From the IMG/VR virus record IMGVR_UViG_3300046653_000093, positions 151,809 to 215,808 of that record: a stretch of DNA of 64,000 bases; one strand, 5' to 3'. A program made the translations under genes and the position numbers. A model generated the notes under the pieces. That model was given only the letters and a program-made list of their open reading frames with translations, ran no database searches and was not told the DNA's origin. Each line of letters starts with the position of its first letter. Positions within the stretch are counted from its first letter, which is position 1. Of the stretch, positions 36,775 through 63,251 are shown piece by piece.

Positions 36775-37284
36775 TTATACATTTTCTATCAAATTCGTCA
36801 GCTGCTTCATACGCTCATCAATACTCATAGTTTTTGGCTGTTTTTCAGGGATTTTTGGAACACTTTTTTTACCAGAAGAAGGTATTTTTCTAGGTGTGGT
36901 ACTGCCCTCGGTGCCCTGATTTTGATTACCCGTTGGGCTCCACTCATCAGAATTTGCGTCATCTTGTGAAATGAACATACTGTTCATTGGTGTTCCGCTA
37001 AGGCGATTAGGGTCGCTTGGATCACCAAGGTCATCAAGATTAGCTTGGCCAAACTTTGATAGTAGTGTGAGTGCGGCATCCACATCAGATATGGATGCAT
37101 TTGGATTTAGCTGTCCATTGCGCCAAATCATTCCCCTTACAGATGGAACGCTTGCTGCAATTAGATTGTCGAGTCCCCTCATGACTCTGCGAAACTTCAA
37201 ATCAGAATCAATAGCAATGCTAGGAGATTTACTGTGTAAGTATCTCTTCCAGTCTTCTATTGTGTTCTGAGATCTCTCATCCAT
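36775..37284 (-). CDS. Hypothetical protein (putative internal head protein)
   Basis: 169 aa, translationally coupled block. Confidence 0.5.
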   Translation of the reverse strand: MDERSQNTIEDWKRYLHSKSPSIAIDSDLKFRRVMRGLDNLIAASVPSVRGMIWRNGQLNPNASISDVDAALTLLSKFGQANLDDLGDPSDPNRLSGTPMNSMFISQDDANSDEWSPTGNQNQGTEGSTTPRKIPSSGKKSVPKIPEKQPKTMSIDERMKQLTNLIENV

Positions 37285-38524
37285 TTAATCCTAAATTAGC
37301 AAGCAATTCGTTATTAAGATCACCCATCGATGGCTTTTGTGGGGTTGGCTGATTTGAGGCAATTTGAGCGTTAGTATTCGTCGGCTTTGGTTGCGCTTCT
37401 TTCGATGCGGCCTGAGCTAATGTCTCATGAATTTCTGGAGTCTTTTCTTTGGCGACATCAATAGCGCCTTGGAACTTTACAAGCTCTTGATCAATCGCCC
37501 CCAACAAACCTCCACTTGTGCTCTCTTGCTTTCCAGGGGCAAATTGCTTGATGGTAGAAAATACATCGGCTTTACCTTCAAGGGCATAGATAAGTGTCTC
37601 TTCTGGAGTATCTGTGAATGAACGTGTAAGAGCGTGCAGCTTTGCTGACCAGGAACCTCTTTCCTCGGTATCTTCACTAGCCATAATACGAATCGCACTA
37701 GCCCATCCTTTGATAGCTCCTTTGATTTTGGCCAATTGATTCATGTAATTTGTAACTATTTGATGAGCGGCTTCAGCCTTCTTCTTTTCATCTTCTTGCT
37801 GAGCGGCAGAAATTGATTCATCAACAGAATGAATTGGAACAAGTTGAGTCTTTACATTGTATACTTGCTTTGCCATATTCATTGCATTAATCATATCTCT
37901 TCTGATTGGAGCTGCATAGGCTCGATCAGATAATGGATTAAGTGCAGTTATTACCTTCTGAGCATTTTGATAAACGTCCTCAGCTGGAGGAGCTCCCGAG
38001 AAGAAATAATAACCCAGCCCCAATACTGCTGCCGCTATGCCGGCTACTGCTAAAGGGGCAATTGCCTCCTTTTTCATCTGGCGCTCTTCCAAACGCTGAG
38101 CACAAGAATCAGCAAGTACCATCAACTTCTCTTCTTCTTGACTGTCAAGCGTAAACGCTGACCTTATCAAAGAATCTAAAAGTTCTTTTTTTGCCGCAAC
38201 ATATCGCCTTTGTGTCAGTTGCCCATTCGGCATCTTCAACGCAATATAGGCCATCATGTCCTGATGCTGTTGTTCATTTTCAACAACAGAATTCATTGCA
38301 TCATAAGCACGACCAACTGTAGCTGTTTCTGGATGAGCAAATTCAACAATGTTCTTTTTCTTTTCCGGCTCTGGCTCGATGTTGTATAGCAAACGAATAG
38401 CATCGTCGGAAAGTGAGTCATAACTTCGCGGCAAAGTGCCAGATTGGCCATCCTCTTCGGCCACCGAAATTAGCCCTTGAGCAACGGCTATCTTTTCAAA
38501 TTCATCCCAAATATCATGGCTCAT
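37277..38524 (-). CDS. Putative internal head/ejection protein with TM segment
   Basis: KKEA followed by hydrophobic IAPLAVAGIAAAVLGLGYYFF; start refined to MSHDIW. Confidence 0.5.
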   Translation of the reverse strand: MSHDIWDEFEKIAVAQGLISVAEEDGQSGTLPRSYDSLSDDAIRLLYNIEPEPEKKKNIVEFAHPETATVGRAYDAMNSVVENEQQHQDMMAYIALKMPNGQLTQRRYVAAKKELLDSLIRSAFTLDSQEEEKLMVLADSCAQRLEERQMKKEAIAPLAVAGIAAAVLGLGYYFFSGAPPAEDVYQNAQKVITALNPLSDRAYAAPIRRDMINAMNMAKQVYNVKTQLVPIHSVDESISAAQQEDEKKKAEAAHQIVTNYMNQLAKIKGAIKGWASAIRIMASEDTEERGSWSAKLHALTRSFTDTPEETLIYALEGKADVFSTIKQFAPGKQESTSGGLLGAIDQELVKFQGAIDVAKEKTPEIHETLAQAASKEAQPKPTNTNAQIASNQPTPQKPSMGDLNNELLANLGLNG

Positions 38525-38525
38525 A

Positions 38526-39599
38526 TTATTTTCTCCCTTCATTCACGGATTTGAAAACATCATCAATGAACAGCTTCACAACCTCATCCCTTGATTTGTA
38601 GGGATCTGGAATAACCACTTCAAGTTGCCCAGGTTTCCAGTCCTCTGTTATTTCACGGACGGCATTCCAAAAAGAAGGTGTATTCAATATAATGCTTTTA
38701 TATTGGTCTAGACTTGGATATGACTGCAATGCCCATTTCAAAAGCATTTCGTGAGGTTGCTGTCCATTTAGTTCTTCAACCCACATGTCACCTGGTTTTG
38801 TTTTGTAAACATAAGAATTCACACCAGTAGGAGCTGGCGTCTGAGAACTACTAACCTGAGGTGCAGATGCTGCTGGTGTAATAGATCCTTGTCCAACTTC
38901 ACCTGGCTTCTTTGAAAATGCTGAGGTAGCAACTCCAGCTACCGCAAGCAAACCAGCAGATAGAAGTATCGTTTTCAAGAACCACGACAGCAAGCCAACA
39001 ATTATATTGCCCCTTCGTCTCGCACTAAATAGATTAAGTAAACCCTTCAATGGATTAAGCCAACCGCCTTCTGCACGATTGCGCTCAAGATATGAATTAC
39101 TTTTACCTATTGCTTCTTTGGTAAGTTGGCCTTTATTCCTCATCGCTCGTAATGGATAGAAAAGGTCATCAGCTTCGCCCTCTTCTGGCTGAGGTTCTGT
39201 TGAAGAGGTCTCTGAAGCTTCAGGTATGGCGGCTTGAGCTGCATTATTAATCTGCTCAGCGGTTACTGGTTTACCAGCCTCGATATCCGGCAAAATGGCA
39301 TTCTTAATTTTCTCGTAGATTGCTGTAAGATCATATCCAAAATGCTCTGCTATAGCAACCAAAGCGCCTAGTAAGGGATGAATACCAAAAAACAATGCTG
39401 GGGCTAAAAGATCTACAATCTTTCTTGGAGTGCTATAGTTTCCACCTACCAACGAAGAAACTTCATTACCAATACTTGGCAGAATAGCCGCTAGATCAAA
39501 AGCGTACTTCTCAAACCGATTGTCATTAAATTCAGCAAGAACCTGAAACGTTTCTTCAAGCAGAATTGTATCGGATACATACTGAATATCACCATTCAT
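38526..39599 (-). CDS. Putative internal head/ejection protein with TM segments
   Basis: Hydrophobic LLAPALFFGIHPLLGALVAIA and IIVGLLSWFLKTILLSAGLLAVAGVA; KYA and KEA motifs. Confidence 0.5.
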   Translation of the reverse strand: MNGDIQYVSDTILLEETFQVLAEFNDNRFEKYAFDLAAILPSIGNEVSSLVGGNYSTPRKIVDLLAPALFFGIHPLLGALVAIAEHFGYDLTAIYEKIKNAILPDIEAGKPVTAEQINNAAQAAIPEASETSSTEPQPEEGEADDLFYPLRAMRNKGQLTKEAIGKSNSYLERNRAEGGWLNPLKGLLNLFSARRRGNIIVGLLSWFLKTILLSAGLLAVAGVATSAFSKKPGEVGQGSITPAASAPQVSSSQTPAPTGVNSYVYKTKPGDMWVEELNGQQPHEMLLKWALQSYPSLDQYKSIILNTPSFWNAVREITEDWKPGQLEVVIPDPYKSRDEVVKLFIDDVFKSVNEGRK

Positions 39600-41401
39600 T
39601 ATTGTCCTTTTCTAGCCCTTTCCATTCTTTCTTTATACTCTCTTCCCCAAACGCCAAGCAGACCCCTAATCTTATCTTCCCACTTACCAAGAAAATCATG
39701 CTGCTTTTCAAGGGTTGATTGAAGTTCATTATACTTTTGCTCCAGCAATCTATCATCATGCTTACCGCGCTCTTTCCAATCATTAAACTGATTGATTGCA
39801 GTAGTGCTCCACTCATTATAGATGTCCCTCAATGAGTCCCTAACCGCCGCTGCCCATGGCCCAAAATTCGCATATTTTTCAGCATCATTAGTACCAGCTA
39901 CATTACTTAGAGCTATTTGTTCCCATCCACCAAATGACCAATCCTTAATATTTAGTTGTGGTAACAAACCTCCAATAGTCAAATCAGAAACAGATTTGCT
40001 TTGTCTGCTAGGAAAGTTCTGCATGATGATAAAATTACCAAGAGGTGGCCCTTGATTTGTTCTACCATAAGTATGTCCACTACTACCCTCACCTTCGCCC
40101 TCATCGCGTCGCTGATGAGCTTTACCAGTAGTTCCACCAGCTCCAGTGCCATGCAAAAGTTCCCTAATCATCTTCCTGGTTACAACTGGAACTTTTGGAT
40201 TACCACTAGCTTTGATAGCTTTTATTAGATCGTTCTTTATATCATTCCAAGCATTGGATATACTTTCCATTTGTTGGGCATAAAACTTACCAAGTTGAGC
40301 ATCATATTTATTTGCAATCTTACCTTTCCTATCTGGTCGTGGACTTGGCAAAGATCCTGGCTTTCCAGCGGTTCCATTCCACGCCCCATATAGTGCATCA
40401 AATTCTGCGTTTGCTCTTTGCAAAAACCATTTGATACTATCTTCAATAACACTCAGGCAGTGTGAATCAGAAGATTGAGCAGGGGCAACTGGAGCGGCCA
40501 CGACTGGAGCAGCGTCTTGTCCTAATCGGAAAATAGTTCTATCCAAAATCTCACTTGCCAATTTTCCGAAATAATCATCTAATGCCGCAGTAGCTGGAGC
40601 TTTAGCGGGAGCTAGTTTAGGAGCAGGCTGAGGTTCGGAATCTAATGGATTACAAGGGAAGTGAGGTTTCAGCCCACTCATAAAATCAAAGAAGCTTAGA
40701 AGATCTGCTAAATCTCCCATTGTTACTGGATGACGTCCCCAACCAACACCAAACGGATCTGATAAACCAGAATCTGGAAGAGATGGATCAATAACATCAA
40801 CAACAATCATTCCAGATCCCTCGGCAACAGATTCAACAGATGTTTGAATGCCAAGCGCACCGAATATTCTTGAGATGTTGTTTATGTTCTCACGAGCCTT
40901 CTCAATCAACTCTGCATCTTTCATTGATTGATATGGAATCGTACCAGTGCCTTCAGAAATTATTACGTCCTTGATGTTTAGCTGGGTCACCAAAGTCTTA
41001 ATTGCAACAAGTGCATCATGGGTATTCTTTCCCCATACACCATCGGCAGCTGCTGCACGCGATGAAGCCGACGATCCTGTTCTGGCAAAATGCACAGCCT
41101 GATCTGTAATGAGCTTAGCAGTCACCTTGGTATTTGGATCTTGTTGCTGTAAAGTGATAACAACTGATTGAGCAACATCTGGTTTACTTAGCTGAGTTCC
41201 TAAATCAACCATTAGGTTTTGCATTGTAGCAACTGTGCCATCAACATCTTTGTTGGTTGATTTAACGCCACCGGCAGGGGCTCCTCCACCACTAGGTGCG
41301 GCTCCGCCATGTCCACCAGGAATATGAGCCTTTCCTGTAACGCCACCACCGCCGACGCCAACCCAAGAGGCTACGTCCTGCCCAGCAAACTTAGAAGTCA
41401 T
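39599..41401 (-). CDS. Putative ejection protein with peptidoglycan-binding-like motif
   Basis: ADGVWGKNTHDAL (DGxxGxxT pattern of PG_binding_1 domains); 600 aa. Confidence 0.45.
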   Translation of the reverse strand: MTSKFAGQDVASWVGVGGGGVTGKAHIPGGHGGAAPSGGGAPAGGVKSTNKDVDGTVATMQNLMVDLGTQLSKPDVAQSVVITLQQQDPNTKVTAKLITDQAVHFARTGSSASSRAAAADGVWGKNTHDALVAIKTLVTQLNIKDVIISEGTGTIPYQSMKDAELIEKARENINNISRIFGALGIQTSVESVAEGSGMIVVDVIDPSLPDSGLSDPFGVGWGRHPVTMGDLADLLSFFDFMSGLKPHFPCNPLDSEPQPAPKLAPAKAPATAALDDYFGKLASEILDRTIFRLGQDAAPVVAAPVAPAQSSDSHCLSVIEDSIKWFLQRANAEFDALYGAWNGTAGKPGSLPSPRPDRKGKIANKYDAQLGKFYAQQMESISNAWNDIKNDLIKAIKASGNPKVPVVTRKMIRELLHGTGAGGTTGKAHQRRDEGEGEGSSGHTYGRTNQGPPLGNFIIMQNFPSRQSKSVSDLTIGGLLPQLNIKDWSFGGWEQIALSNVAGTNDAEKYANFGPWAAAVRDSLRDIYNEWSTTAINQFNDWKERGKHDDRLLEQKYNELQSTLEKQHDFLGKWEDKIRGLLGVWGREYKERMERARKGQ

Positions 41402-43122
41402 TATTTTCTCCCTTTGGCAGATTCTACAATTTTTCTCACACTGGACAAGAATATGTTCTTGTTAGGAGCATCAATGCCCATATCAGAAAGAGCCTCTTGA
41501 AGTTCAACCCATGGCTTGTTCTGATACTCATCAATAATTTCTTTGAGTTGTTGTATCTTGTTAGAAATATTCACTGCTTTCTTAGCCACGTCTATATCTT
41601 CGCTTTGTGTTTGTTCGCCCCAATATGTAGATGCCGCTTCAAGCTGTGATGTATCCATAGTAAATGGCTGAAGCTGATCTGAGCTCGCCATAGACTTGTA
41701 TTGATCCGAAATGGAGGTTCTTATACCATTTACCCAATTAACTATCTGATCAATAAGACCGGCATTCACTGCTCTCATTTGGCTGAATGTTGGTTCCTTG
41801 CTAAACTTAGCTAAAGCATCACTAATATCTTTTCCAATTCTAATCAATTGCCTCAGCGCAGTACTTACATCAGTTAGCCTGTCACCAGTCTTGATAGCAT
41901 TCAACTCGGTATACAATCTTTCAGGAAGACTTCTCATTACTGTTTGAGCTTTCACAATCGTATCGTTGTTTTCTCCAAAAGCAGATACATATACAGCTCT
42001 AACCTGTTGGGCTAGCCATTGACAAGCGGCCCAAGCATTATCATTATTTGTAGCAAACTGAATTCCGCCAGCAAAAATGTAGGATGAATCGTTGTTAGGA
42101 TTCATATAAGTAGATTCAAAAACCTGGCCAATACCAATGGCAGTAGATATCTTGCGAAGTGTATCTACTTGTGCCGTTGGAATAAGAGCATGAGCATTTT
42201 GTAGTTTTGTATATAGCGCTTCTGCAGTAACAGCTGGAACTTCGCCTTGCGTCAAAACACCTTCTGCGACAGCAACCTGTGCTACATTATTCCAAGAAGT
42301 AATGCTTCTTGGATTAACCTGAATGCCAGCTAAACGAGCAAAATAAATATATGCCGCTTGTTGCTCTGTGCCTGCCGGATCTGTAAGAATAAATGCGTCT
42401 AAAGACGGAGCGCTCTTTCTGGCAGTGTCAAACTCTTCTAATGTGGTTTGGACATTTGCAAGAATAGCCCTTCTTGTCTTCGGAGTTTCTCTACTTACAG
42501 TTGATGTTATTGGCGATATGCTTTGCTGGGGAGCTGCCTCTGAGGCAGCTGGTCCTCCTTGAGGCGCTCCTCCTTGGGAAGATGTATAATATCCTGGCGC
42601 TCCGCCCTCTTGCGCAACCTTATTAATCATCGAGGCCAATGTGGCCAATCGATTCATAGCCTGCTTTCCTGTAGGCTCCTTACGAGTTACAGCAAGAATT
42701 TTATCAGCGATACTCTGCATCGTTTCAAATGTTCCAAGATCTCCAGAACCCTCAATGAGATTCACGTCTCCATCGCGATGCGCAAAGTTAATCAAATCTT
42801 TATTTGTCTCTTGAGTAACATTATAAAATGCATTTTCTGCTTGCTTGAACATAACCAGCTTTTTTTCAAGATCTTCAGCTTGAACAATAAGACCTTTTCG
42901 TCTCATTGCATAAGCTAAGCGGGCGACATCAACAATGAGATCTTCAGAGGGAGAAGCATCAACTTCTTGATTGATGATTCTGGTTTGTTCAACCTCTTGG
43001 GCTGCAAGCTTAATTAGCTCGGAATCTGTGGGTTTGAAAAATCCCTTCTTCACAGCCTGACGCTCAAGTTCGCGGTATACTTCAGACTGATATAGATTAT
43101 CTGTATATTTTGAAAGCGTCAT
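41401..43122 (-). CDS. Putative internal head/ejection protein
   Basis: Helical; KLA and KVA motifs; FAHRDG resembles FAHPET in the 37277 gene; start refined to MTLSKY. Confidence 0.5.
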   Translation of the reverse strand: MTLSKYTDNLYQSEVYRELERQAVKKGFFKPTDSELIKLAAQEVEQTRIINQEVDASPSEDLIVDVARLAYAMRRKGLIVQAEDLEKKLVMFKQAENAFYNVTQETNKDLINFAHRDGDVNLIEGSGDLGTFETMQSIADKILAVTRKEPTGKQAMNRLATLASMINKVAQEGGAPGYYTSSQGGAPQGGPAASEAAPQQSISPITSTVSRETPKTRRAILANVQTTLEEFDTARKSAPSLDAFILTDPAGTEQQAAYIYFARLAGIQVNPRSITSWNNVAQVAVAEGVLTQGEVPAVTAEALYTKLQNAHALIPTAQVDTLRKISTAIGIGQVFESTYMNPNNDSSYIFAGGIQFATNNDNAWAACQWLAQQVRAVYVSAFGENNDTIVKAQTVMRSLPERLYTELNAIKTGDRLTDVSTALRQLIRIGKDISDALAKFSKEPTFSQMRAVNAGLIDQIVNWVNGIRTSISDQYKSMASSDQLQPFTMDTSQLEAASTYWGEQTQSEDIDVAKKAVNISNKIQQLKEIIDEYQNKPWVELQEALSDMGIDAPNKNIFLSSVRKIVESAKGRK

Positions 43123-43123
43123 A

Positions 43124-43447
43124 TTAATCCTCAAGGTCAAGCAGTGCTAAGCCATTCAAAAAGTTTGGATCTACCTTATCTTTCAGCTCTGGGTGTTGCT
43201 TTATTGCATCCGCCGCCTTTTTGAGATATGCTTTCAACGCGGGGTCACTGGCAACCTTCTCGCGAAAAGCTTCAATATCAGCCATCACTTGGTTCTCATG
43301 ATCGATAGCAGCGGTAACAGCATTCACCTTCTGAAGTTGCTCTCGCGCAAGCTCAGCTTGAGAATAGTTTCTCCACACTTCCGAGCTATTCATCACTCGT
43401 CTAGTCTGGTCATCGTCGAAAAAATCCTTCCAAACCTGATCGTTCAT
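43124..43447 (-). CDS. Hypothetical protein
   Basis: SSEVWRNY resembles QSEVYREL in the next gene; preceded by TA-N5-GCAT motif. Confidence 0.55.
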   Translation of the reverse strand: MNDQVWKDFFDDDQTRRVMNSSEVWRNYSQAELAREQLQKVNAVTAAIDHENQVMADIEAFREKVASDPALKAYLKKAADAIKQHPELKDKVDPNFLNGLALLDLED

Positions 43448-44695: not shown

Positions 44696-44702
44696 AAACA
44701 CT

Positions 44703-45483: not shown

Positions 45484-46104
45484 TTATGTCATCAATCCAC
45501 TGAGTTGCTGTACGGCAGCTGGGTTTTGAACCTGCTTGCCAATTTCTCCAACAATACGTGGCCAATTCGCTGCAAATGCCCAATCTTCTCCGTGTCCACC
45601 ATTCTTTACATAACTAACAAAATTCTGTGTATCTTCTGGGAGAGGGCCCTTTCCATATTGACCAAAAAGCCAATTTGCAAACTGAGGAGCATTGGCTAGT
45701 CTTGGATTTTCAGCCGCATTCTGGAACTTGAAAATATTGAAGTCGTCAACCTTTTCCATTACTGGAGCATTACCAACATCGCCATCATCAGCTTTTGCTT
45801 TATCTGCGTTTGGATGAAATGGTGTTACTGGTTTTGGTTCCTTCTTGAGCAATCCTATCATTCCAAATTCTTTAGGATCTAGTTTGCCCTTATCTGGCAC
45901 TGTTGATTTTGGCGCTTCTTGTGCAATCTTCAAAATGGCACTGTAAGAAGCAGCCGCTGCAGCTTTTGCGATATCTTCCCAAGTTGGAGAAGTCTTAAAG
46001 CTTCTGCCCGCAACCTTCCAAACTGGTGGGTTGAGAATTGCATTATATGTAGCCAAAGCCGCTGCTTGTGCAGCTTTCTTGGCGATCTGTTCTTTACGTG
46101 TCAT
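45484..46104 (-). CDS. Hypothetical Ala-rich head-region protein
   Basis: Internal repeat IAKxA..AAA..Y.AIL; KVA and KIA motifs; GGAGG RBS. Confidence 0.55.
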   Translation of the reverse strand: MTRKEQIAKKAAQAAALATYNAILNPPVWKVAGRSFKTSPTWEDIAKAAAAASYSAILKIAQEAPKSTVPDKGKLDPKEFGMIGLLKKEPKPVTPFHPNADKAKADDGDVGNAPVMEKVDDFNIFKFQNAAENPRLANAPQFANWLFGQYGKGPLPEDTQNFVSYVKNGGHGEDWAFAANWPRIVGEIGKQVQNPAAVQQLSGLMT

Positions 46105-46121
46105 TATTTCCTCCAATATAT

Positions 46122-47038: not shown

Positions 47039-48061
47039 TTATGCTAAAAAACCTTTAGCCAACTCCTCTGCTAACTTCTGTAAAGATGTTTTCTTGCTCG
47101 CAACACTACGAGTCAATTCATCAAGATTAGGCTCTTCTGCCTCTGCATTGCCATCCTCTCCGATACCCTCAACCAATGATTCAATATCTGGATCATCAAG
47201 ATCAAGCTCACCTTCACTAGCACCTTCAGCTTCAGCAGGCTGATCAAGAATAGACCAATCACCTTCGCCCTCAGCAGGCTCTTCAAGTTCTTGCATCAAT
47301 TTCTCGAACTCTTTGTTGTCATCTGAATCTTCGGCCATACCCATATCGCCGCAATCAGCATCGCCGCAATCAATAACTTCGGAGGCATCATCGGACGCTT
47401 TTTTGGTAGTCTTCTTTTTGTCGTCCTTCTTGTCGTCTTTGCCCTTTGGCTTGGCCTTATCGTCTTTCTTGTCGTCCTTCTTCTTCAACCAAGGAGGTAG
47501 CCCTTTGGCATCATTCTTGTCGCCTTTTTTAGCATCTTCCTTTTTCTTGGCATCTTCCTTCTTTTTTTCGGCGGCCTTCTTCTCTTCTTCCTTCTTCTTG
47601 GCTGCGGCTTCTTCCTTCTTGTCTTTGCCCTTGCCTTTTTCTTCCTTCTTCTTGGCAGCGGTTTTTACAAGGTTATCAAGAGCTAACAATGTGAGAGCTG
47701 ATGCCTTAGAGAGTCCTGCCTCGTCCAAAATTTCGGAAGCGTTGCACAAACTCTTAATACAAGATTCGTACTTGGTCATAGCCTTCTTTTTTGCAGCTTT
47801 GGCCTTAGCCTTCTCTTTCTCGGCCTTCTCCTTTGCCTTCTCTTTTTCAGCTTTGGCCTTGGCCTTTTCCTTGTCAGCCTTTGCCTTCTCTTTTTCAGCT
47901 TCGGCCTTAGCCTTCGCCTTTTCTTTGGCAGCCTTTTCCTTATCGTCTTCTTTCTTTGCAGCCATCTTTGTGAATTGTGGTTCTGCCTTTGTGAAAATAG
48001 ACTGATATACTGGGCTGGCCATAATACCATTCATCTCTGTAGCAATATCAAATTTAGACAT
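47039..48061 (-). CDS. Lys/Ala/Glu-rich low-complexity protein (histone-like, putative DNA-condensing) with acidic tail
   Basis: KEKAKAKAE repeats, KKEDAKK, acidic C-terminus; start refined to MSKFDIA (GAGG RBS). Confidence 0.6.
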   Translation of the reverse strand: MSKFDIATEMNGIMASPVYQSIFTKAEPQFTKMAAKKEDDKEKAAKEKAKAKAEAEKEKAKADKEKAKAKAEKEKAKEKAEKEKAKAKAAKKKAMTKYESCIKSLCNASEILDEAGLSKASALTLLALDNLVKTAAKKKEEKGKGKDKKEEAAAKKKEEEKKAAEKKKEDAKKKEDAKKGDKNDAKGLPPWLKKKDDKKDDKAKPKGKDDKKDDKKKTTKKASDDASEVIDCGDADCGDMGMAEDSDDNKEFEKLMQELEEPAEGEGDWSILDQPAEAEGASEGELDLDDPDIESLVEGIGEDGNAEAEEPNLDELTRSVASKKTSLQKLAEELAKGFLA

Positions 48062-48079
48062 ATTTACCTCATTATGGAT

Positions 48080-48102
48080 GGGCGGGGCCTTCAACCCCGC
48101 CC
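48080..48102. promoter_or_regulatory. GC-rich intergenic stem-loop
   Basis: gggcgggg-ccttcaa-ccccgccc; no U-tract on the coding strand. Confidence 0.5.
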
Positions 48103-51100: not shown

Positions 51101-51575
51101 CTCTCTTTCTACGGTCATCATATACGGTGTCAACAATAACGCCTCGAATCTTATCAACCGACTGTGATTGATGATCGAGGCATAATGGACGACCGACCCA
51201 ATTTTTATATGCTACTTTCAACTCTGCTTCTGGAAAGATGTCTCGGTTATTATTCCGATAAGGCATAAGGGTTTTTTCATTACAAACCCACTTTACACCG
51301 CCTTCCTTAGTAGATTCCCAAGCAGCTTCGACATCTTTTCCTTGTGATGTCTTCTTTGGGGTTCCATCATCATTAATGCAAGCTGCCTCAGCGGCATGCA
51401 TCATCACGCAAGTAAAATATAAGAAGTCTTTTGCTTTTGGAGCGATAACCTTCAACTCTTGAGCAAACTTGTACATGCGGTTTTCAATATCCAAATCCAT
51501 ATCATCTGCCAATTTCTCAATTGGCTTGATATCCTCTGGTCTGATGAAAACCGATTCTCCTAGTTTAATAAGCAT
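48114..51575 (-). CDS. Prohead protease fused to long scaffold/internal region
   Basis: N-terminal protease-like block NNNRDIF..GRPLCLDH..RGVIVD..VSMGT..CSDC..CQHM..IELSLVVSGADPKA, followed by coiled-coil, acidic and repeat regions; 1153 aa. Confidence 0.75.
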   Translation of the reverse strand: MLIKLGESVFIRPEDIKPIEKLADDMDLDIENRMYKFAQELKVIAPKAKDFLYFTCVMMHAAEAACINDDGTPKKTSQGKDVEAAWESTKEGGVKWVCNEKTLMPYRNNNRDIFPEAELKVAYKNWVGRPLCLDHQSQSVDKIRGVIVDTVYDDRRKRVIALCALDAKNYGDLADKVKTGVANNVSMGTAVGRAVCSDCHRVARTEKDFCQHMKNKSCYGEINLDLTPIELSLVVSGADPKAKVKHIIASDIAKAAGLLSDYLEVKKGLSRQDLTSIQKDLQSLMGKIESMANDFDESDESDAVGPTRSSWSMEESGAEPSTQINPPEAFPTYASELQRAILGAQTKLASLQENLLRVVSNNEEPTMTKKNAYFQGTEEPKPGQAQYSKDPLNEKARLMDKNLHGPAPFPNTGDEEGMYPGDEKVKKELQRLADEHERALFREAALKKAKEQLQSKGYYLGTEEPKPGKVQYSKDPLNEKDRMLDKQMVGEKPFPGVGDVEGLYDDDEKEKEKLLRASLVKARFEKVALPDGRVNKSASSWVVYANDKAILRASVDQITKGNSESLYDAVATERFGKSLLNRIQTEGFQATADALLKNAQAAPAAPPAPPVDGAAGGADLPPLEPPKNVGGKGGNTDEIVDDLQSLFDEMGGKLSDLRDKVSGAVSEDADAMPDVEPAGDAEFSEGPKTASQLQSMRKRVNGMLQEGVDETITSLAKHMREINTAKRVYKETYASMTEEQREYLNALTISAVKDAKAMLVDAGKLMEAVVKYAYGTAELEKRASQKDPEKDLLDAIFASEEETEETADAADGTEECADAADAKDGAEDEECADAKDGAEEESADAATGELPCADEGAAEDGGTFDSWLANIKGKGASDKADAKLSLKTPDGTTQQLGEVTVTAGGTLELSTKEGRAQARIKLAEKGLLGFNELSNDAHPGGSVSAVDAGNLDVKPNVPGAEFHVPKDIQSYMLELANMPPRVRKQAEMIQALVAEGKMKADDVDKLVSHGVDAEAVKYWKELFGQGDTESKDFATKLTQEHAKAKQAEEVESYKGRIKRAYEVAHQMIAKGMITEGQLDSQVNDIMKWNDAGFESIKNILARQPSMNKQASIPMVGLLSSGEVILPMAKVAQEGEQDIKSFFDNYFESKGLKF

Positions 51576-55568: not shown

Positions 55569-56776
55569 TATTTGACTTCCTTTCCATCGACCATAACTTT
55601 TGGAGTGCCAACGTACCGGAGGTACTGTTCTGGATTTTTGTATCCACGATTAAATGCTTCAGCAACTCTCTCTTTTGAAAAGCGAGGAAGATCTTGTACT
55701 ACATCATAAATACAAACATCTATGGCTTGCCCTCTAATACGGTCCAAATCAACAGCTGTTTTCAGCAAACTAATGCTGCGCTGCTCATCACCAAGCTGAT
55801 CACAGAGCTCAGATGCTTGGGCCAATAGAGCAGTGCCAATACCAACATGACCATTCAATATCGCTGTCCTGGCATTAGCGATCATATCATTTACATCCTT
55901 GGCTGCTTTCTGACTTGGAGGATTACCAGAAAGGATTGGTCCCGCTGATGGCACTGGTGGCGGTGTAGGTGGCACCGGTGAAGTTGGAGCAGCTGCTGGC
56001 GGGGTTATTTGAGGCTGAGATACTTCGGCAGGTTTAGCAGGCTCAGCTGGAAAGTTGGCTATATACATACGCTTCAGATGCTCTTTTTCATTACCTAGCT
56101 TCTTTTGATATTCTCTAGCAAGTCGCACATACTCCATGATATTTCTACGATTGTCATCCAATACAGCAAATGCCTGATCGATTAGAGCGTATGTGCTTTC
56201 AGCAATGGCCATTGCTTCTCGCGCCGCATTTTGTTGCTTGCCTTGTATATTTTTGAAAATCTTATCGAAAAGAACTCCCTCTAATTCTTTTTTGGTAGGT
56301 ATTTTTTCCTGAAGCCATTGGGTAACGCCAGCTTCAATAATCAATTCTGGGTCTGGTGAAGCTGCTACTCGTGGAACTTTTCGAACACCAAGCTGTTCTT
56401 CAAGCTGTTGTCTCTCAAAATCATCCATCGTATTTTGAGAAAACTCAGAATATATTTCACTACCGATAGTATCCAACTCATCTATCTGATCAATGAAAAC
56501 GCCATTAACAGAATCTAAAATAGAATTGGCATATTGGAAAACTCTTAAGAAATCACGATTCTTCATTGCCATTCGAGCTTGATGTAACTGATCGCGCAAG
56601 CTAGGCTTCAATCTCGTAATATTATCACGCATCGCCTTATCAACGGCATCTACAGCTGCAATTAACCTGCGATATTTGCTGGAGGACATCTGCCGAATCC
56701 ATTCCATTGGATTTAGGGATCTCCCAAGCATCTTAGTTACAGATCTCTTTTGAGCTTCTTTTTCAAAGTTATTCAT
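55568..56776 (-). CDS. Hypothetical head-region protein
   Basis: Follows portal; Pro-rich linker; KEA and KTA motifs. Confidence 0.55.
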   Translation of the reverse strand: MNNFEKEAQKRSVTKMLGRSLNPMEWIRQMSSSKYRRLIAAVDAVDKAMRDNITRLKPSLRDQLHQARMAMKNRDFLRVFQYANSILDSVNGVFIDQIDELDTIGSEIYSEFSQNTMDDFERQQLEEQLGVRKVPRVAASPDPELIIEAGVTQWLQEKIPTKKELEGVLFDKIFKNIQGKQQNAAREAMAIAESTYALIDQAFAVLDDNRRNIMEYVRLAREYQKKLGNEKEHLKRMYIANFPAEPAKPAEVSQPQITPPAAAPTSPVPPTPPPVPSAGPILSGNPPSQKAAKDVNDMIANARTAILNGHVGIGTALLAQASELCDQLGDEQRSISLLKTAVDLDRIRGQAIDVCIYDVVQDLPRFSKERVAEAFNRGYKNPEQYLRYVGTPKVMVDGKEVK

Positions 56777-56817: not shown

Positions 56818-58728
56818 TTATCCTGGAGGAGCTGGTGGTTTCGGTGCTCCACCGCCGCCTCCGCCAATCGGAGATGGTGGTGGTGATCCAGACATTGGAC
56901 CAGGTCCGGGAGGTGCTCCTAATCCCCCACCTAATCCACCTGGTGCCGCTCCTCCACCTGGTGGAGTTATGAATGGACTTTCTCCTGGTACTGGTTGATC
57001 AATCTGAGTCACCTCATCAATCTCATCGCCAGGTCCAAGAGCCCTTAGCTCATGAAGATCATATTGTGCTAGAGAGGCTAGTTCTTTGATTCGAATTGCA
57101 TCTTGAATATCTTCGTAGCGAATCTTTCTCTGCTCTTCTTCGTATTCAAGACCAAGGCTTCTATATAGCGTTTGCAATGAAGCGCGCTTAGCCACACCTT
57201 CGCCGGTTGTAAGCTGAACCATCTGATTGATGTAACTATCCATATCAAACAATGACATGTGATTCCAATCAATCTCTGGAACAATAAGAGTCTTCTCTCC
57301 GTCAATTAGGTCATAAAAGTCCTGGATTTGTGCAATTGGAGCGAAGATTTTTCTCTTCAACCAACTAGACATCATTTGACGGAATTGCATGTATCTCTGT
57401 CGCAACACATCCAAAGCAACAGATCCTGTTGCATAAGTGGTATCACTGCCATCCATAATAACCGATGGAACCATCAAGCCAATATAGATCTCTTTGATAA
57501 GCTGAGTCACGTCAGCCGAAGTATCATAAATACCCTGGCCATATCCAATACGATCAACGGTTACGGCATCATGGGTGAAAATCTTGAAGTCCCTATCGTA
57601 TTGAGCTTGCTCGAATACGTGTCTCCAGTTCTCAAGATCAACTGGGCTTGGACGGAATTCCTGGTTTCCAATCTTAACCAATGTCAATGGATTGACCATG
57701 TTATCTGCTTGTGCATACTTAGATTCGCGCAATTTGTCCCACAACATAAGAGCTCGGAAACACGAAACAATAAGGCCCGTTCCACGAATTTCGTATGGGG
57801 AAATTCTTCTAGCCATATGATGCACATAGAAGTTGTTTAGGGGGATTTGCTCATTCTTTCGTACATGCTCAATGATCGAAGGGTCCAGCTGCTTGCGCTG
57901 TTGTAGATCTGATGGTTGATTACCAAAAACTACTCGTCTAAGATTCTCATCTGGGCGCATACTAATGATTGGCTCTGCCGCAATTACGCTACGCTGTACG
58001 TTGACATAATCCGGATTGAGAATCATCAGGCGGCTCCAACTTCCCTTGCTCTCGTCTAACTCGCAATAAGTAAAGGCCTCACCAAGAATCCAAAATTCTT
58101 GGGCTGCCATACAGGCAATATTCATTAGATCAATTTCCTCCGACATTTGGGAGAAGAACTTCTCTACCTTCGGATTCTTTGATTTGATATTCAACTTAGC
58201 AATTGGATAAGTTGAGTGTAATGTAATTGCATTATGAACAATTGGATTCAATGCAAAAAAGCTGCGGCTCCAAGCATTGATAGTTGGACGGTCTCTTGGT
58301 AAGTTGAGGTTCGAGTTCAACCATAGAGGAGAGTAGACTTCGGGAACTTGCCTTACAGAATCGTTAGAGCCACGCCAGCCCCCACCAGCAGAAGAGGCAA
58401 CATTGCCGACCCCACTGGCCATTTTATACATACCCTTGCCATTGTGAGTAACTACACCTAAACTAGTTTGAGCATTCCGAACTTCGCTGCGGCCACTCCT
58501 AGAAGATGAGAAACCAGACCCTTGCTCTCTCAGCTCTCCAGCATCAATCTGCATTTCCATAATATCTCGGCGTTGATCACTAACGCCACGAGCCATTCGA
58601 TTGGAAACCTCAGGAATACTAGAGAGAGCTATATTTTTGGCCATTAAGCTTTCAGAACGAGAAGCTATCTTAGCATTCCTTTCAATAAGGTCTTGCGCAC
58701 GTGTTTTGGTATTATTAATATCCATCAT
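56818..58728 (-). CDS. Portal protein
   Basis: Follows terminase; NPIVHNAITLH, EFWILGEAF, ILNPDYV, PYEIRGTGLIVSCFRAL, IYIGLMVP; Gly/Pro-rich tail. Confidence 0.8.
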   Translation of the reverse strand: MMDINNTKTRAQDLIERNAKIASRSESLMAKNIALSSIPEVSNRMARGVSDQRRDIMEMQIDAGELREQGSGFSSSRSGRSEVRNAQTSLGVVTHNGKGMYKMASGVGNVASSAGGGWRGSNDSVRQVPEVYSPLWLNSNLNLPRDRPTINAWSRSFFALNPIVHNAITLHSTYPIAKLNIKSKNPKVEKFFSQMSEEIDLMNIACMAAQEFWILGEAFTYCELDESKGSWSRLMILNPDYVNVQRSVIAAEPIISMRPDENLRRVVFGNQPSDLQQRKQLDPSIIEHVRKNEQIPLNNFYVHHMARRISPYEIRGTGLIVSCFRALMLWDKLRESKYAQADNMVNPLTLVKIGNQEFRPSPVDLENWRHVFEQAQYDRDFKIFTHDAVTVDRIGYGQGIYDTSADVTQLIKEIYIGLMVPSVIMDGSDTTYATGSVALDVLRQRYMQFRQMMSSWLKRKIFAPIAQIQDFYDLIDGEKTLIVPEIDWNHMSLFDMDSYINQMVQLTTGEGVAKRASLQTLYRSLGLEYEEEQRKIRYEDIQDAIRIKELASLAQYDLHELRALGPGDEIDEVTQIDQPVPGESPFITPPGGGAAPGGLGGGLGAPPGPGPMSGSPPPSPIGGGGGGAPKPPAPPG

Positions 58729-58757
58729 TATCCTCTATATCACTACACGGCCAGTAC

Positions 58758-60626: not shown

Positions 60627-60683
60627 TTATACCTATCTATATAACACATATATGAAAATACAGATAAATGTATAGAATTACAA

Positions 60684-61562: not shown

Positions 61563-61646
61563 ATTTATCCTCTGTATTATGCAGCAAGCTGTATTATAGA
61601 ATTATTTTTGTATTGTTTAGATAATATTCGGATTTATCGCGCATCA

Positions 61647-62495
61647 TTATCCTCGGTATTGCGCACTCCAATCAAACCCATCATTTCTATAAGTTTCAAT
61701 GTGACTGCCAACAGCATATCCTCTATCCTGAGACATAGGAAATCCCATATCTGCTAATAACTGGGAAAGTTCAGCCTGCTCCCTTTTATCAAGAGTATAT
61801 TCTTCTACTTGACGCTTGAATATATCCTCAATATCATGTCCGGCCGATACCATTCCATTGATACAAACACGCGCAATTCTTGAAATCAACAATGGAACTG
61901 TAATCGTAATACCAGTGATATTTGTGGCCTTTTGAGCCTCTTTGACAATGCCAGAATCTTCTGACCAGCTCTTGCTCTTCTTCTTCTTGTGACGCTTGTA
62001 CTTATCAACCTTCACACTCTCTAGACGGTCTAGTAGGCGCTCAAGTCCATTTTCAATTTGCTCACGAGCCCGCTCGGCCTGTGCGGCATCAATCTCATCT
62101 TTGAAATCGGTACGCATAGCTTTTGATATCTCACGATCCAACGCTTCAAAATAAGCAATTGCCTTTTCCAATCCGGTAGTATCATAACCAGAATGTGGGG
62201 GAACGCCATTGAACATTTTGCTAAGCCAAGGAAGGAAGCTAGAGTGTTCCCATTTCCATGCATCAGAATCTGCAGGATCGGCCTCTACCTCAATATCTTC
62301 GTCATCACCGTCATTCTCTACAATAATATCCTGTGCATCAGGAGCACCCGGAATCTTGTCAAGATTGAAAATGACTTCATGAGGATCTTTTGAGACCTCA
62401 ATATTATCACCTATTTCAAAGGACGGAAAATGATGCCCGCCTCCCATCAAAGGGACAATAACTTCTCCTAAATCTTGTGCGCGTTTTTCTACCAT
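61647..62495 (-). CDS. Hypothetical head-region protein
   Basis: GAGG RBS before MVEKRAQD; KRA and KEA motifs. Confidence 0.6.
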   Translation of the reverse strand: MVEKRAQDLGEVIVPLMGGGHHFPSFEIGDNIEVSKDPHEVIFNLDKIPGAPDAQDIIVENDGDDEDIEVEADPADSDAWKWEHSSFLPWLSKMFNGVPPHSGYDTTGLEKAIAYFEALDREISKAMRTDFKDEIDAAQAERAREQIENGLERLLDRLESVKVDKYKRHKKKKSKSWSEDSGIVKEAQKATNITGITITVPLLISRIARVCINGMVSAGHDIEDIFKRQVEEYTLDKREQAELSQLLADMGFPMSQDRGYAVGSHIETYRNDGFDWSAQYRG

Positions 62496-62530
62496 TACAA
62501 CCTCAATGTTGCTAACAAACCTATTCTGAA

Positions 62531-62769
62531 TTATTCGTATAAATTCTTCCATACCTTGTAAGCCAATATCTTGCGAATATAGTCTTTTGAGACCTTAAAC
62601 CTAATAAATAAATTAGAAACTCCTTGATAATATAGATTTCTAATATTAATAATATCCTCAGATTTTAATTTTATTCTATTTTTCCAGGCATCACTCATCT
62701 TCTTTTTGTTTCTTGGCTAACAATTCTTCCACTAAGCTTTTTGGAGACCTTCTCTTTTTGCTGACTCAT
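62531..62769 (-). pseudogene. Degenerate homing endonuclease relic (NUMOD3-like plus HTH-like tail)
   Basis: SQETKR/(frameshift)/MSDAWKNRIKLKSEDIINIRNLY..FKVSKDYIRKILAYKVWKNL; no nuclease domain. Confidence 0.5.
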
Positions 62770-63251
62770 ATTTTCCTTATAATATCAATTATATAACTAC
62801 CTTGAAGGCTATAAGTTCCAAAGTATAAGTTTCTCGTCACATTGTAGTCGCTGAGGTAACCGGCGGGATAAGTAGTCAGACCTGTGATGATACCATTGAA
62901 CATCTTGGAATAATATGGTGATGGCATCAGTGGTTGAGCCGGACCTTGCCCAGGAGCCGTATCATCGTGATTACATTCTACCGCATCATTATGTTCTAGA
63001 ATATGCCCCGCATACTTACAAGGAGACGGTTCATCTGAGCTTCGTAATAAATTCCAAGCAAGAAGCTTAGCATTAGCGGCAGCTAACATTTCCTTTTCAT
63101 CCTCGGATGCTTCCTTGCCCATAACTCCAAACGGTGCCATTTGGTCTACATAATCGCCGGCATTTTTGCAGGCAAATGGTATTGGAAGACCGAATGGGCA
63201 TTTGTTCTCTTCATTCTTACGAACTTCTGCTATTTTTAAATGACGCTTCAT
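62766..63251 (-). CDS. Hypothetical Cys-containing protein
   Basis: CPFGLPIPFAC..CKYA..VEC; start refined to MKRHLKIA (ATGA overlap). Confidence 0.55.
   Translation of the reverse strand: MKRHLKIAEVRKNEENKCPFGLPIPFACKNAGDYVDQMAPFGVMGKEASEDEKEMLAAANAKLLAWNLLRSSDEPSPCKYAGHILEHNDAVECNHDDTAPGQGPAQPLMPSPYYSKMFNGIITGLTTYPAGYLSDYNVTRNLYFGTYSLQGSYIIDIIRKI

What the first reader, a model, noticed from the sequence alone, without database searches (positions are those of the whole stretch)
36775..63251. Pervasive K-x-A motif in head-region proteins: putative prohead-protease cleavage or packaging tag
Seen: K-x-A, often preceded by a hydrophobic residue and followed by Q/S/A, recurs at N-termini and domain boundaries. 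Examples: MTSKFAG, FEKEAQ, VEKRAQ, IVKEAQ, MYRKAY, INKVAQ, ILKIAQ, LVKTAA, LLKNAQ, PKTASQ, LEKRASQ, MNKQAS, MAKVAQ, MYKMAS (portal), LVKYAA (MCP N-terminus). Established: T4 gp21 and phiKZ gp175 cleave many head proteins at short motifs. Inference: most hypothetical genes from 36.8 to 63 kb encode proteins packaged inside the head and matured at K-x-A. Their distribution is complementary to the DGY proteins (inside versus outside).
Basis: partly seen in the sequence, partly recalled or inferred. Interest (0 to 1): 0.7.

Follow-up and report, generated by a model that had tools for sequence, protein, structure and literature searches.

The report
Predicted capsid-protease cleavage motif Φ-x-K-x-A
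A short signature (hydrophobic-x-Lys-x-Ala, usually followed by Gln/Ser/Ala) marks the head proteins of this ~400 kb uncultivated phage and its many relatives, and is most likely the cutting site of the phage's own herpesvirus-like capsid maturation protease, with a specificity I could not find reported for any phage.

Summary
The signal is Φ-x-K-x-A-[Q/S/A]: 24 vs 3.9 expected in head proteins (z≈10). The reversed motif gives 2 vs 3.5, and swapping K or A removes the excess. In an unbiased scan of ~48,000 patterns, K-x-A-S ranks first. Across the 392 kb contig that contains this record, only the three 20 kb bins covering the head module and its right flank are enriched.

The better sites are conserved islands in divergent sequence: the MCP N-terminus (26-residue propeptide), portal residue 102, 5–8-residue N-terminal peptides on two proteins, and several domain boundaries of a 1153-aa protease–scaffold protein. 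In 116 family members, Φ-x-K-x-A averages 9.8 vs 3.3 expected. Relatives' head proteins with no homologue here are also enriched (15 vs 4.5).

Best reading: a prohead-protease cleavage motif, probably cut after Ala. Cleavage and the scissile bond are inferred, not shown. "Most genes" is an overstatement: 12 of 25 proteins carry a strong site, and about 7 sites are conserved. I rate it a new variant of a known kind.

The parts
48114..51575 (-). 1153-aa protease-scaffold fusion protein (P0001): N-terminal capsid maturation protease followed by ~900 aa of coiled-coil, repeat, Pro/Ala-linker and acidic low-complexity sequence
   Evidence: PHROG head maturation protease, E 1.4e-15. 36% identical to phage G gp19, E 2e-29. 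1660 homologues, mostly 1100-1300 aa.
50826..51440 (-). Protease domain (residues ~46-250) with the assemblin/T4 gp21 fold. His135 = 51171-51173, Ser186 = 51018-51020. Contains a Cys196/Cys199/Cys210 cluster insertion.
51459..51476 (-). Site MYKFA|Q (K36), N-terminal to the protease domain; candidate autoprocessing site
   Evidence: In 115 homologues: PHI 1.00, K 0.83, A 0.86. The whole segment is conserved and modelled as helix, so this is weaker evidence for cleavage than the linker sites.
49776..49793 (-). Site LLKNA|Q (K597), immediately before a hypervariable Pro/Ala linker
   Evidence: PHI 0.91, K 0.87, A 0.88, P1' 0.90, against flank identity 0.35 in 115 homologues. Alignment shown.
49224..49241 (-). 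Site LEKRA|S (K781), before the acidic low-complexity region
   Evidence: PHI 0.84, K 0.77, A 0.85, against flank identity 0.21.
48615..48632 (-). Site VRKQA|E (K984)
   Evidence: PHI 0.92, K 0.58, A 0.92, P1' 0.88.
48243..48260 (-). Site MNKQA|S (K1108), ~45 residues from the C-terminus; candidate removal of a C-terminal tail
   Evidence: K 0.70, A 0.77, flank 0.30. Orthologues read K-x-A-G-R-M-P-Q-V-G.
34814..35815 (-). Major capsid protein. The true start is Met16 of the longest ORF 34814-35860.
   Evidence: PHROG major head protein, E 1.9e-76. 53% identical to phage G gp27. Orthologues start at the equivalent of M16.
35735..35752 (-). Site LVKYA|A in the MCP, 24-26 residues from the true N-terminus; predicted 26-residue propeptide
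   Evidence: Invariant in 6 de-duplicated orthologues, though the MCP is ~79% conserved overall. Phage G MCP lacks this N-terminal segment. Translation checked.
56818..58728 (-). Portal protein
   Evidence: PHROG portal, E 1.3e-46, aligned from residue 88 onward.
58414..58431 (-). Site MYKMA|S (K102) in the portal's variable N-terminal extension; predicted removal of ~104 residues
   Evidence: K 1.00, A 0.75, P1' 0.94, PHI 0.90 in 52 orthologues, with flank identity 0.31 in a heavily gapped region. Phage G portal has RKMA|SP at residue 55.
56750..56767 (-). Site FEKEA|Q at the extreme N-terminus of the 402-aa protein 55568-56776 (true start MNNFEKEA|Q)
   Evidence: K, A and Q all 1.00 in 9 orthologues, whose N-termini read MEKEA|Q, MTFEKEA|Q and MSTDKYA|Q.
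62475..62492 (-). Site VEKRA|Q at the N-terminus of protein 61647-62495 (true start MVEKRA|Q)
   Evidence: A 0.92, Q 0.90 and PHI 0.90, but K only 0.13. Orthologues read MSLQSTA|QEL.
61932..61949 (-). Site IVKEA|Q (K204) in protein 61647-62552
   Evidence: K 1.00, A 0.87, P1' 0.95, PHI 1.00, flank 0.42, next to a gapped region, in 39 orthologues.
45919..46086 (-). Three sites (IAKKA|A K13, IAKAA|A K51, ILKIA|Q K63) in the first 65 residues of the 210-aa protein 45484-46116; candidate multi-cut propeptide
   Evidence: All three kept in 4 orthologues at 34% mean identity.
40553..40570 (-). Site FGKLA|S (K280) in the 600-aa protein 39599-41401
   Evidence: K, A and PHI all 1.00 in 5 orthologues at 29% identity, but P1' is variable (S/R/K/D/E), so it may be structural.
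42610..43017 (-). Sites LIKLA|A (K44) and INKVA|Q (K174) in the 579-aa protein 41401-43140
   Evidence: Motif matches only; too few orthologues to test.
47654..47974 (-). Sites FTKMA|A (K43) and LVKTA|A (K144) in the Lys/Glu/Ala-rich 351-aa protein 47039-48094
   Evidence: Motif matches only; too few orthologues to test.

Best explanation
PHI-x-K-x-A-[Q/S/A/E/G] is the recognition motif of the phage's own capsid maturation (prohead) protease. That protease is the assemblin/T4-gp21-fold serine protease forming the N-terminal ~250 residues of the 1153-aa protease-scaffold protein (window 48114-51575).

Proposed sequence of events:
1. The fusion protein co-assembles with portal, MCP and accessory or internal proteins into the prohead.
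2. The protease then cuts at the motif. It most likely binds the substrate as an extended strand, so that alternate side chains occupy the subsites (P5 hydrophobic, P3 Lys, P1 Ala), and cleaves after Ala.
3. This removes a 26-residue propeptide from the MCP, ~104 residues from the portal, and 5-65-residue N-terminal peptides from several accessory proteins. It also dissects the scaffold part of the fusion protein at its linkers.
4. The very short N-terminal peptides may also act as capsid-targeting tags, as in T4.

Shown here: the motif's specificity, its confinement to the head module, its conservation, its presence in non-homologous head proteins of relatives, and the protease fold with invariant His and Ser.

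Inferred: that cleavage occurs at all, that this protease performs it, and which bond is cut.
For: 1. Specific enrichment after composition control: 24 vs 3.9, with reversed and substituted motifs flat. It is the top hit of an unbiased pattern scan.
2. Genome-wide, only the head-module bins are enriched.
3. Sites are conserved islands in divergent or gapped sequence: P0001 sites 597, 781, 984 and 1108; portal 102; protein 61647 site 204; protein 55568 site 10. K and A in motif context are more conserved than other K and A residues in the scaffold (p 0.03 and 0.002).
4. 115 of 116 divergent protease-scaffold homologues exceed expectation: 9.8 vs 3.3 per protein.
5. In relatives' head modules, 58 protein clusters with no homologue in this window carry 15 sites vs 4.5 expected, against 3 vs 4.4 for the reversed motif. 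This argues for a common trans-acting reader rather than shared ancestry of the sites.
6. Positions fit known maturation biology: MCP and portal N-termini, 5-8-residue N-terminal peptides, inter-domain linkers, and both ends of the protease. Phage G gp19 has sites at 43, 248 and 274 flanking its catalytic domain.
7. Protease fold and catalytic residues.
8. Phage G's head module is also enriched: 9 vs 1.8.
9. The i, i+2, i+4 spacing and the free P2 match the P3-x-P1 logic of T4 (L/I-x-E) and of SPN3US/phiKZ (A/S/G-x-E; PMC10052503), and of herpesvirus assemblin (own knowledge).
Against: - There is no direct evidence of cleavage: no proteomic or N-terminal data are accessible for this phage or a relative. 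The phage G capsid paper (PMC7316594) was not readable.
- The phage G negative control is not clean. A non-structural 50 kb stretch shows 9 vs 3.3 (z 3.1).
- The N-terminal bias is weak and was not replicated.
- Site 36 and the MCP site lie in generally conserved segments, so their conservation is uninformative.
- Site 280 of protein 39599 has a free P1' and may be structural.
- Bxz1-type mycobacteriophage ET08 has a homologous protease-scaffold protein but no clear K-x-A enrichment, so the specificity is not a property of the whole protease family.
- Complex prediction gave no answer.
Confidence: 0.68

Rival explanations
1. Same protease and same motif, but a different register. The bond cut is after Lys (PHI-x-K|x-A), which mirrors T4's L/I-x-E| with the P1 charge reversed and recalls HK97's cut after Lys. 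Ala and Gln/Ser would then be P2' and P3'.
For: PHI-x-K reproduces the P3-hydrophobic, P1-charged geometry of T4 gp21 sites. K is as conserved as A at most sites.
Against: This register would pair an almost unrestricted P1' (T, A, Y, S, Q, R, F, M, E) with a strict P2' Ala, which is unusual. N-terminal orthologues of protein 61647 lose K but keep L..A-Q. The shortest N-terminal tags (MEKEA|Q, MYKSA|Q) would leave only a 3-residue leaving peptide.
Confidence: 0.2
2. The motif is a docking or capsid-targeting tag that binds the scaffold, portal or MCP interior and directs proteins into the prohead, without being cleaved.
For: The motif is confined to head-module proteins and is present on non-homologous cargo-like proteins. 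Several copies sit at extreme N-termini, as in T4 capsid-targeting sequences.
Against: Many copies sit in linkers inside the scaffold protein and flank the protease domain itself, which is what self-processing predicts. A 5-residue tag is very short for a stand-alone binding epitope. In the known systems (T4), targeting tags end in a cleavage site, so the two roles are not exclusive.
Confidence: 0.12
3. The motif is a by-product of composition or secondary structure (Lys/Ala/Glu/Gln-rich amphipathic helices and coiled coils in scaffold-like proteins) and has no specific reader.
For: Head proteins are richer in K (7.9%) and A (9.2%) than the rest. Some matches lie in predicted helices (site 36). 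A non-structural stretch of phage G shows a mild excess.
Against: Within-protein shuffles already control for composition. The reversed motif, register shifts and K-to-R/E or A-to-S/G/E/L swaps are all flat. The i, i+2, i+4 spacing is not helical. Sites persist as islands in gapped, hypervariable linkers.
Confidence: 0.05
4. The motif is read by a different enzyme, such as a host protease or a lysine-modifying or cross-linking activity acting on head proteins.
For: Nothing specific. It cannot be excluded from sequence. Staphylococcal phage 80alpha uses a host protease for head-protein N-terminal trimming (own knowledge).
Against: The motif co-occurs with this protease family in Bacteroidota-type huge phages and in the Bacillus/Lysinibacillus phage G, whose hosts are very different. 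It also flanks the protease domain itself.
Confidence: 0.04

Closest known systems
T4 gp21 prohead protease and its L/I-x-E sites, including the N-terminal capsid-targeting sequences of the internal proteins
   Different: P1 Glu motifs are not enriched here ([LI]-x-E z 1.9, no higher than in the tail and rest sets). The determinants are Lys and Ala plus a P5 hydrophobic residue. The protease is fused to ~900 aa of scaffold-like sequence and carries a Cys-cluster insertion. The portal is predicted to be trimmed.
phiKZ gp175 / SPN3US gp245 prohead proteases with (S/A/G)-x-E sites (PMC10052503, PMC5694885)
   Same: A giant-phage setting in which many head proteins have N-terminal propeptides, some with several motif copies. 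The portal and MCP are processed. The motif is usable to predict substrates.
   Different: [SAG]-x-E is depleted rather than enriched here (125 vs 144). The motif chemistry is different. Everything here is prediction, whereas those systems have mass-spectrometric proof.
Herpesvirus assemblin (maturational protease), which cleaves (V/L/I)-x-A|S at the M and R sites (own knowledge)
   Different: P3 is Lys rather than an aliphatic residue, and the hydrophobic determinant sits at P5. P1' is Gln as often as Ser. There are many substrates rather than two sites. The catalytic third residue was not identified here.
Bacillus/Lysinibacillus phage G gp19 and its head module
   Same: Closest named relative: MCP 53% and protease 36% identical. 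Its head module shows the same motif excess, with sites on the portal, on gp19 itself and at the N-termini of gp9, gp13 and gp38.
   Different: gp19 is a 300-aa stand-alone protease rather than a 1153-aa fusion. The phage G MCP lacks the N-terminal propeptide segment. The background control in phage G is less clean.

Membership tests
Assemblin / T4 gp21-type capsid maturation protease (MEROPS clan SH) | Characteristic protease fold | tested here: met
Assemblin / T4 gp21-type capsid maturation protease (MEROPS clan SH) | Conserved catalytic His followed by the nucleophilic Ser | tested here: met
   H135 (LDHQS) and S186 (VSMG) are invariant in 69 homologues and conserved in phage G gp19. Their superposition on the T4 or herpes catalytic residues was not checked residue by residue.
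Assemblin / T4 gp21-type capsid maturation protease (MEROPS clan SH) | Third catalytic residue (His in herpesviruses, acidic in phages) | tested here: inconclusive
   Invariant candidates are D149, D166, E221 and E230. No coordinates were available to choose among them.
Assemblin / T4 gp21-type capsid maturation protease (MEROPS clan SH) | Encoded between portal and MCP, with or next to a scaffold | tested here: met
   Gene order is TerL, portal..., protease-scaffold..., MCP on the minus strand. The C-terminal ~900 aa are coiled-coil or low-complexity.
Assemblin / T4 gp21-type capsid maturation protease (MEROPS clan SH) | Proteolytic activity on head proteins | not testable with these tools
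   Needs biochemistry or virion proteomics.
Prohead-protease cleavage-motif systems (T4 L/I-x-E; phiKZ/SPN3US A/S/G-x-E) | A short motif with fixed P3 and P1 and a free P2, over-represented in head proteins only | tested here: met
Prohead-protease cleavage-motif systems (T4 L/I-x-E; phiKZ/SPN3US A/S/G-x-E) | P1 = Glu | tested here: not met
   [SAG]-x-E is 125 vs 144. [LI]-x-E is z 1.9 in head proteins, the same as in the tail and rest sets. This is why I file it as a new variant and not as a member of those motif classes.
Prohead-protease cleavage-motif systems (T4 L/I-x-E; phiKZ/SPN3US A/S/G-x-E) | Mature N-termini map immediately after the motif | not testable with these tools
   No proteomic data are accessible. 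PMC7316594 is not held.
Herpesvirus assemblin site (V/L/I)-x-A|S | P1 Ala and P1' Ser | tested here: inconclusive
   Ala is fixed. The next residue is Q 0.27, E 0.14, S 0.13, A 0.10 in the scaffold family, and S > Q in the window. The scissile bond itself is inferred.
Herpesvirus assemblin site (V/L/I)-x-A|S | Aliphatic P3 | tested here: not met
   P3 is Lys. The hydrophobic residue is at P5.
T4-type capsid-targeting sequence (short N-terminal tag ending in a cleavage site) | A conserved N-terminal peptide of ~5-20 residues ending in the protease motif, on non-shell head proteins | tested here: met
   MNNFEKEA|Q (orthologues MEKEA|Q) and MVEKRA|Q (orthologues MSLQSTA|QEL). MYKSA|Q in a relative. 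Phage G gp13 and gp38 read MKRLISKTA|A and MKRLIKKA|S.
T4-type capsid-targeting sequence (short N-terminal tag ending in a cleavage site) | The tag is sufficient to direct a protein into the capsid | not testable with these tools
   Needs fusion-protein packaging experiments.

The most novel reading that the evidence does not exclude
A very large, mostly uncultivated clade of huge phages (1660 detectable protease homologues, plus phage G) uses an assemblin-fold protease whose specificity is Ala at P1 with Lys at P3. That is closer to the herpesvirus A|S rule than to the Glu-specific phage enzymes. The 5-6-residue motif would be a portable tag that both targets cargo proteins into the capsid and releases them. 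If so, the packaged (and possibly ejected) proteome of uncultivated huge phages could be read directly from sequence.
Probability: 0.35. Interest if true: 0.65.

Novelty: new variant of a known kind. Interest (0 to 1): 0.5.

Why it matters
Proteolytic head maturation at short motifs is well known for T4 and the phiKZ-like phages. Every phage motif I could find documented there ends in Glu. A Lys-x-Ala motif read by a gp21/assemblin-fold enzyme would be a new specificity, and it would narrow the gap between the phage and herpesvirus branches of this protease family.

In practice it offers a sequence-only way to nominate capsid-internal or processed proteins. That matters for a huge-phage lineage of ~400 kb genomes that has no cultured member apart from its distant relative phage G. 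It also yields concrete, cheap tests: semi-tryptic re-searches of existing phage G virion proteomes, and peptide cleavage by the recombinant domain.

The analysis also corrects several gene starts (MCP, 55568, 61647).

Tried and rejected
- **Near-identical DNA search** in the phage collection found nothing.
- **Pfam** gave no protease family for P0001 or phage G gp19, even at E 10.
- **PDB sequence and profile searches** returned only coiled-coil noise.
- **First AF2 model** (21 sequences) was poor (pLDDT 60) and its fold search was non-significant. It was replaced by the 69-sequence model.
- **Complex prediction** of the protease domain with MCP residues 16-75 gave no verdict (score 0.02). 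I do not count it as evidence either way.
- **Literature**: I found no accessible paper reporting a K-x-A or Ala-P1 phage prohead-protease motif. The phage G capsid paper (PMC7316594) is not held, so prior description there cannot be excluded.
- **Phage G negative control**: the 200-250 kb stretch showed a mild excess (z 3.1), so phage G is supporting evidence only, not clean replication.
- **N-terminal position bias** was not replicated in relatives.
- **Bxz1-type phage ET08**: homologous protease-scaffold protein, but no clear K-x-A signal (PHI-x-K-x-A 9 vs 5.2). PHI-x-[KR]-x-A is 28 vs 14.1 (z 3.8), against z 1.7 in its control set, which I leave as inconclusive.
- **Protein 35915-36610** shows no sequence similarity to the phage G decoration protein gp26.
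- **T4-type and phiKZ-type motifs** were rejected for this phage.

Full report
**What the window is**

All long ORFs lie on the minus strand. PHROG searches identify:
- a large terminase (58758-60626);
- a portal (56818-58728);
- a 1153-aa protein with a head-maturation-protease domain (48114-51575);
- a major capsid protein (34814-35860).

About 20 kb of unannotated genes lie between these.

The record holding the window is 215,808 bp. It is a sub-segment (157,445 to about 373,250) of a 391,957-bp IMG/VR contig that CheckV rates 91% complete. The phage is therefore a ~400 kb 'huge phage'.

The nearest named relative is Bacillus/Lysinibacillus phage G: MCP 53% identical and protease 36% identical. 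Metagenomic homologues of the protease carry Cytophagaceae or Flammeovirgaceae labels, which suggests a Bacteroidota host.

All 15 quoted peptides are present. One of them, MYRKAY, is not K-x-A.

Against within-protein shuffles:
- bare K-x-A is only 1.45-fold enriched in head proteins (96 vs 66);
- K-x-A-[QSA] is 40 vs 14;
- [LIVMFY]-x-K-x-A-[QSA] is 23 vs 3.6 (z 10.6);
- the same 6-mer is 3 vs 1.6 in tail proteins and 5 vs 10.7 in the remaining 47,010 aa.

In the head set K-x-A-S ranks first (19 vs 4.2, p 1e-7). K-x-A-Q, A-S-E and L-x-K-x-A are in the top 15. The tail set is topped by DGY and the rest of the record by DGY and CxxC.

Directional and chemical controls are flat. The reversed motif is 2 vs 3.5. 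PHI-x-x-K-x-A, PHI-x-R-x-A, PHI-x-E-x-A and PHI-x-K-x-[S/G/E/L] show no excess.

In 20 kb bins across the full 392 kb contig, only 340-360 kb (17 vs 2.8), 360-380 kb (12 vs 1.9) and 380-392 kb (5 vs 1.2) stand out. Everything outside the head set totals 30 vs 25.6.

It continues about 9 kb beyond the window's right edge, where four more proteins carry seven sites.

**Conservation**

I collected 160 related loci from IMG/VR around the portal and MCP and aligned orthologues de-duplicated at 90% identity. Sites with a hydrophobic residue two positions before Lys are conserved islands:

| Protein and site | n | K | A | PHI | Other | Flank identity |
|---|---|---|---|---|---|---|
| Portal K102 | 52 | 1.00 | 0.75 | 0.90 | P1' 0.94 | 0.31, in a gapped region |
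| Protein 61647 K204 | 39 | 1.00 | 0.87 | 1.00 | | 0.42 |
| Protein 55568 K10 | 9 | 1.00 | 1.00 | | Q 1.00 | |

The three sites in the first 65 residues of protein 45484 are also kept in all or nearly all of its orthologues (n=4).

Bare K-x-A matches without the hydrophobic residue are mostly not conserved.

The alignments also correct three gene starts:
- The MCP begins at Met16 of the longest ORF, which puts LVKYA|A 24-26 residues from the N-terminus.
- Protein 55568 begins MNNFEKEA|Q. Its orthologues begin MEKEA|Q or MTFEKEA|Q.
- Protein 61647 begins MVEKRA|Q. Its orthologues begin MSLQSTA|QEL.

**The protease-scaffold family**

An exhaustive search found 1660 homologues of the protease domain, 191 of them at E<1e-30. 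Nearly all are 1100-1300-aa fusions.

In an alignment of 115 full-length members (33% mean identity), several PHI-x-K-x-A sites are conserved well above their flanks:

| Site | PHI | K | A | Other | Flank identity |
|---|---|---|---|---|---|
| 36 | 1.00 | 0.83 | 0.86 | | 0.42 |
| 597 | 0.91 | 0.87 | 0.88 | P1' 0.90 | 0.35 |
| 781 | 0.84 | 0.77 | 0.85 | | 0.21 |
| 984 | 0.92 | 0.58 | 0.92 | P1' 0.88 | 0.36 |
| 1108 | 0.50 | 0.70 | 0.77 | | 0.30 |

Sites 526 and 771 are conserved less strongly.

Site 597 sits directly before a hypervariable Pro/Ala linker. Site 781 precedes an acidic low-complexity tract. Site 1108 lies ~45 residues from the C-terminus.

K and A in motif context are more conserved than other K and A residues (Mann-Whitney p 0.03 and 0.002). 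115 of 116 sequences carry more PHI-x-K-x-A than expected, with a mean of 9.8 vs 3.3.

The pooled logo is:
- P5: F/L/V/M/I
- P3: K
- P2: free
- P1: A
- P1': Q > E > S > A

**Replication on unrelated proteins**

I took the plus-strand ORFs of 132 divergent relatives' loci and removed orthologues of the scaffold-protease, portal, MCP and TerL. I collapsed the rest to one representative per cluster and kept only the 58 clusters with no homologue in this window (18,792 aa). Among these the motif occurs 15 times vs 4.5 expected (z 5.5). The reversed motif is 3 vs 4.4.

This is the strongest argument for a common reader rather than inherited sequence.

Phage G's gp1-gp27 proteins are also enriched (9 vs 1.8, z 5.3). 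Sites occur on the portal, on both sides of the gp19 catalytic domain, and at the N-termini of gp9, gp13 and gp38. However, a non-structural 50 kb control from phage G shows a mild excess (9 vs 3.3, z 3.1), so phage G is supportive rather than decisive.

A Bxz1-type mycobacteriophage (ET08) has a homologous 1286-aa protease-scaffold protein but no clear signal.

**The enzyme**

His135 and Ser186 are invariant. A Cys196/Cys199/Cys210 cluster forms an insertion that is shared with phage G gp19. The third catalytic residue was not resolved.

**Mechanism proposed**

The fusion protein enters the prohead with portal, MCP and accessory proteins, and then cuts at the motif. The i, i+2, i+4 spacing with a free intervening residue is what an extended substrate strand in a protease cleft gives. 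It matches the P3-x-P1 logic of T4 (L/I-x-E) and of SPN3US/phiKZ (A/S/G-x-E; PMC10052503).

Reading the motif as P5-P3-P1 places the cut after Ala, as in herpesvirus assemblin (own knowledge). Two observations favour this over a cut after Lys:
- the residue following Lys is unrestricted;
- N-terminal orthologues of protein 61647 keep L..A-Q while losing Lys.

I put roughly 0.6 on the after-Ala register, given that cleavage occurs at all. None of this is shown experimentally.

**What is not supported**

TerL, the HNH endonuclease and eleven others have none. 'Most hypothetical genes are packaged and matured' is therefore an overstatement.

The complementarity with DGY-rich (tail or exterior) proteins does hold: 1 of 11 overlap.

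**Novelty**

I found no accessible report of a Lys-x-Ala or Ala-P1 specificity for a phage prohead protease. The phage G capsid paper could not be read. I classify the finding as a new variant of a known kind. It is well supported as a motif, and unproven as a cleavage site.

Noticed in passing
whole record; G001:C1:157445-373252: The 215.8 kb record that holds the window is an internal piece of a 391,957-bp IMG/VR contig (IMGVR_UViG_3300021077_000115, CheckV 91% complete). The phage is therefore ~400 kb, not ~216 kb.
   Followed up: yes
L173:4-9214 (just beyond window position 64000): The motif-rich module continues past the window's right edge. Proteins of 652, 1423, 508 and 163 aa carry seven more PHI-x-K-x-A-[QSA] sites. 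The 652-aa protein has a site pair (YPKLA|Q, FYKLA|Q) that resembles one in a relative's 685-aa protein (L018: YPKLA|S, FYKTA|Q); homology between the two was not tested.
   Followed up: partly
P0004, P0036, P0038, and ~1500-aa homologues such as P0039 and P0088 (insertion near P0001 residue ~109): Many homologues of the protease-scaffold gene match in two stretches, interrupted inside the protease domain. Three shorter homologues carry Hint or homing-endonuclease Pfam domains, so the insertions are probably inteins. The window's copy is uninterrupted.
   Followed up: no
window 52411-53511 (-): A 366-aa protein between the portal and the protease has an N-terminal dual-specificity/tyrosine phosphatase domain (Pfam Y_phosphatase2, E 2.5e-14). 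It is a candidate packaged enzyme. Its K-x-A matches are not conserved.
   Followed up: partly
window 50940-51020 (-), P0001 residues ~186-212: A Cys196/Cys199/Cys210 (+His212) cluster is inserted just after the catalytic Ser of the protease. The three Cys are invariant across the family and shared with phage G gp19. A metal-binding insertion of this kind is not a feature I know from T4 gp21 or the herpesvirus enzymes.
   Followed up: no
window 49926-50455 (-), P0001 residues 374-550: An internal tandem duplication of ~75-85 residues in the scaffold part (residues 374-446 vs 459-529, 55% identical, E 5e-26). Further downstream there is an acidic low-complexity tract (~790-870).
   Followed up: partly
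window 43916-44731 (-) and 63248-63991 (-): An HNH/endonuclease VII-like gene sits inside the head module. A CCA-adding tRNA nucleotidyltransferase homologue lies just upstream of the small genes that precede TerL.
   Followed up: no
window 3595-34205 (-), tail region: The DGY tripeptide is strongly enriched in tail and fibre-region proteins (40 vs 2.0 expected) and also elsewhere in the genome (34 vs 6.9). It almost never co-occurs with the head motif.
   Followed up: partly
window 27053-34684 (-): Genes immediately downstream of the MCP have orthologues only in the identical contig (L082), not in the ~80 other MCP-bearing loci. Gene content beside the MCP seems to turn over quickly in this lineage.
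   Followed up: no
L174 (Mycobacterium phage ET08, 43857-47717 of NC_013650): Bxz1-type mycobacteriophages have the same layout: a 1286-aa protein with the homologous protease at its N-terminus, one small gene, then a 333-aa MCP. There is no clear K-x-A excess. PHI-x-[KR]-x-A is mildly enriched (28 vs 14.1).
   Followed up: partly
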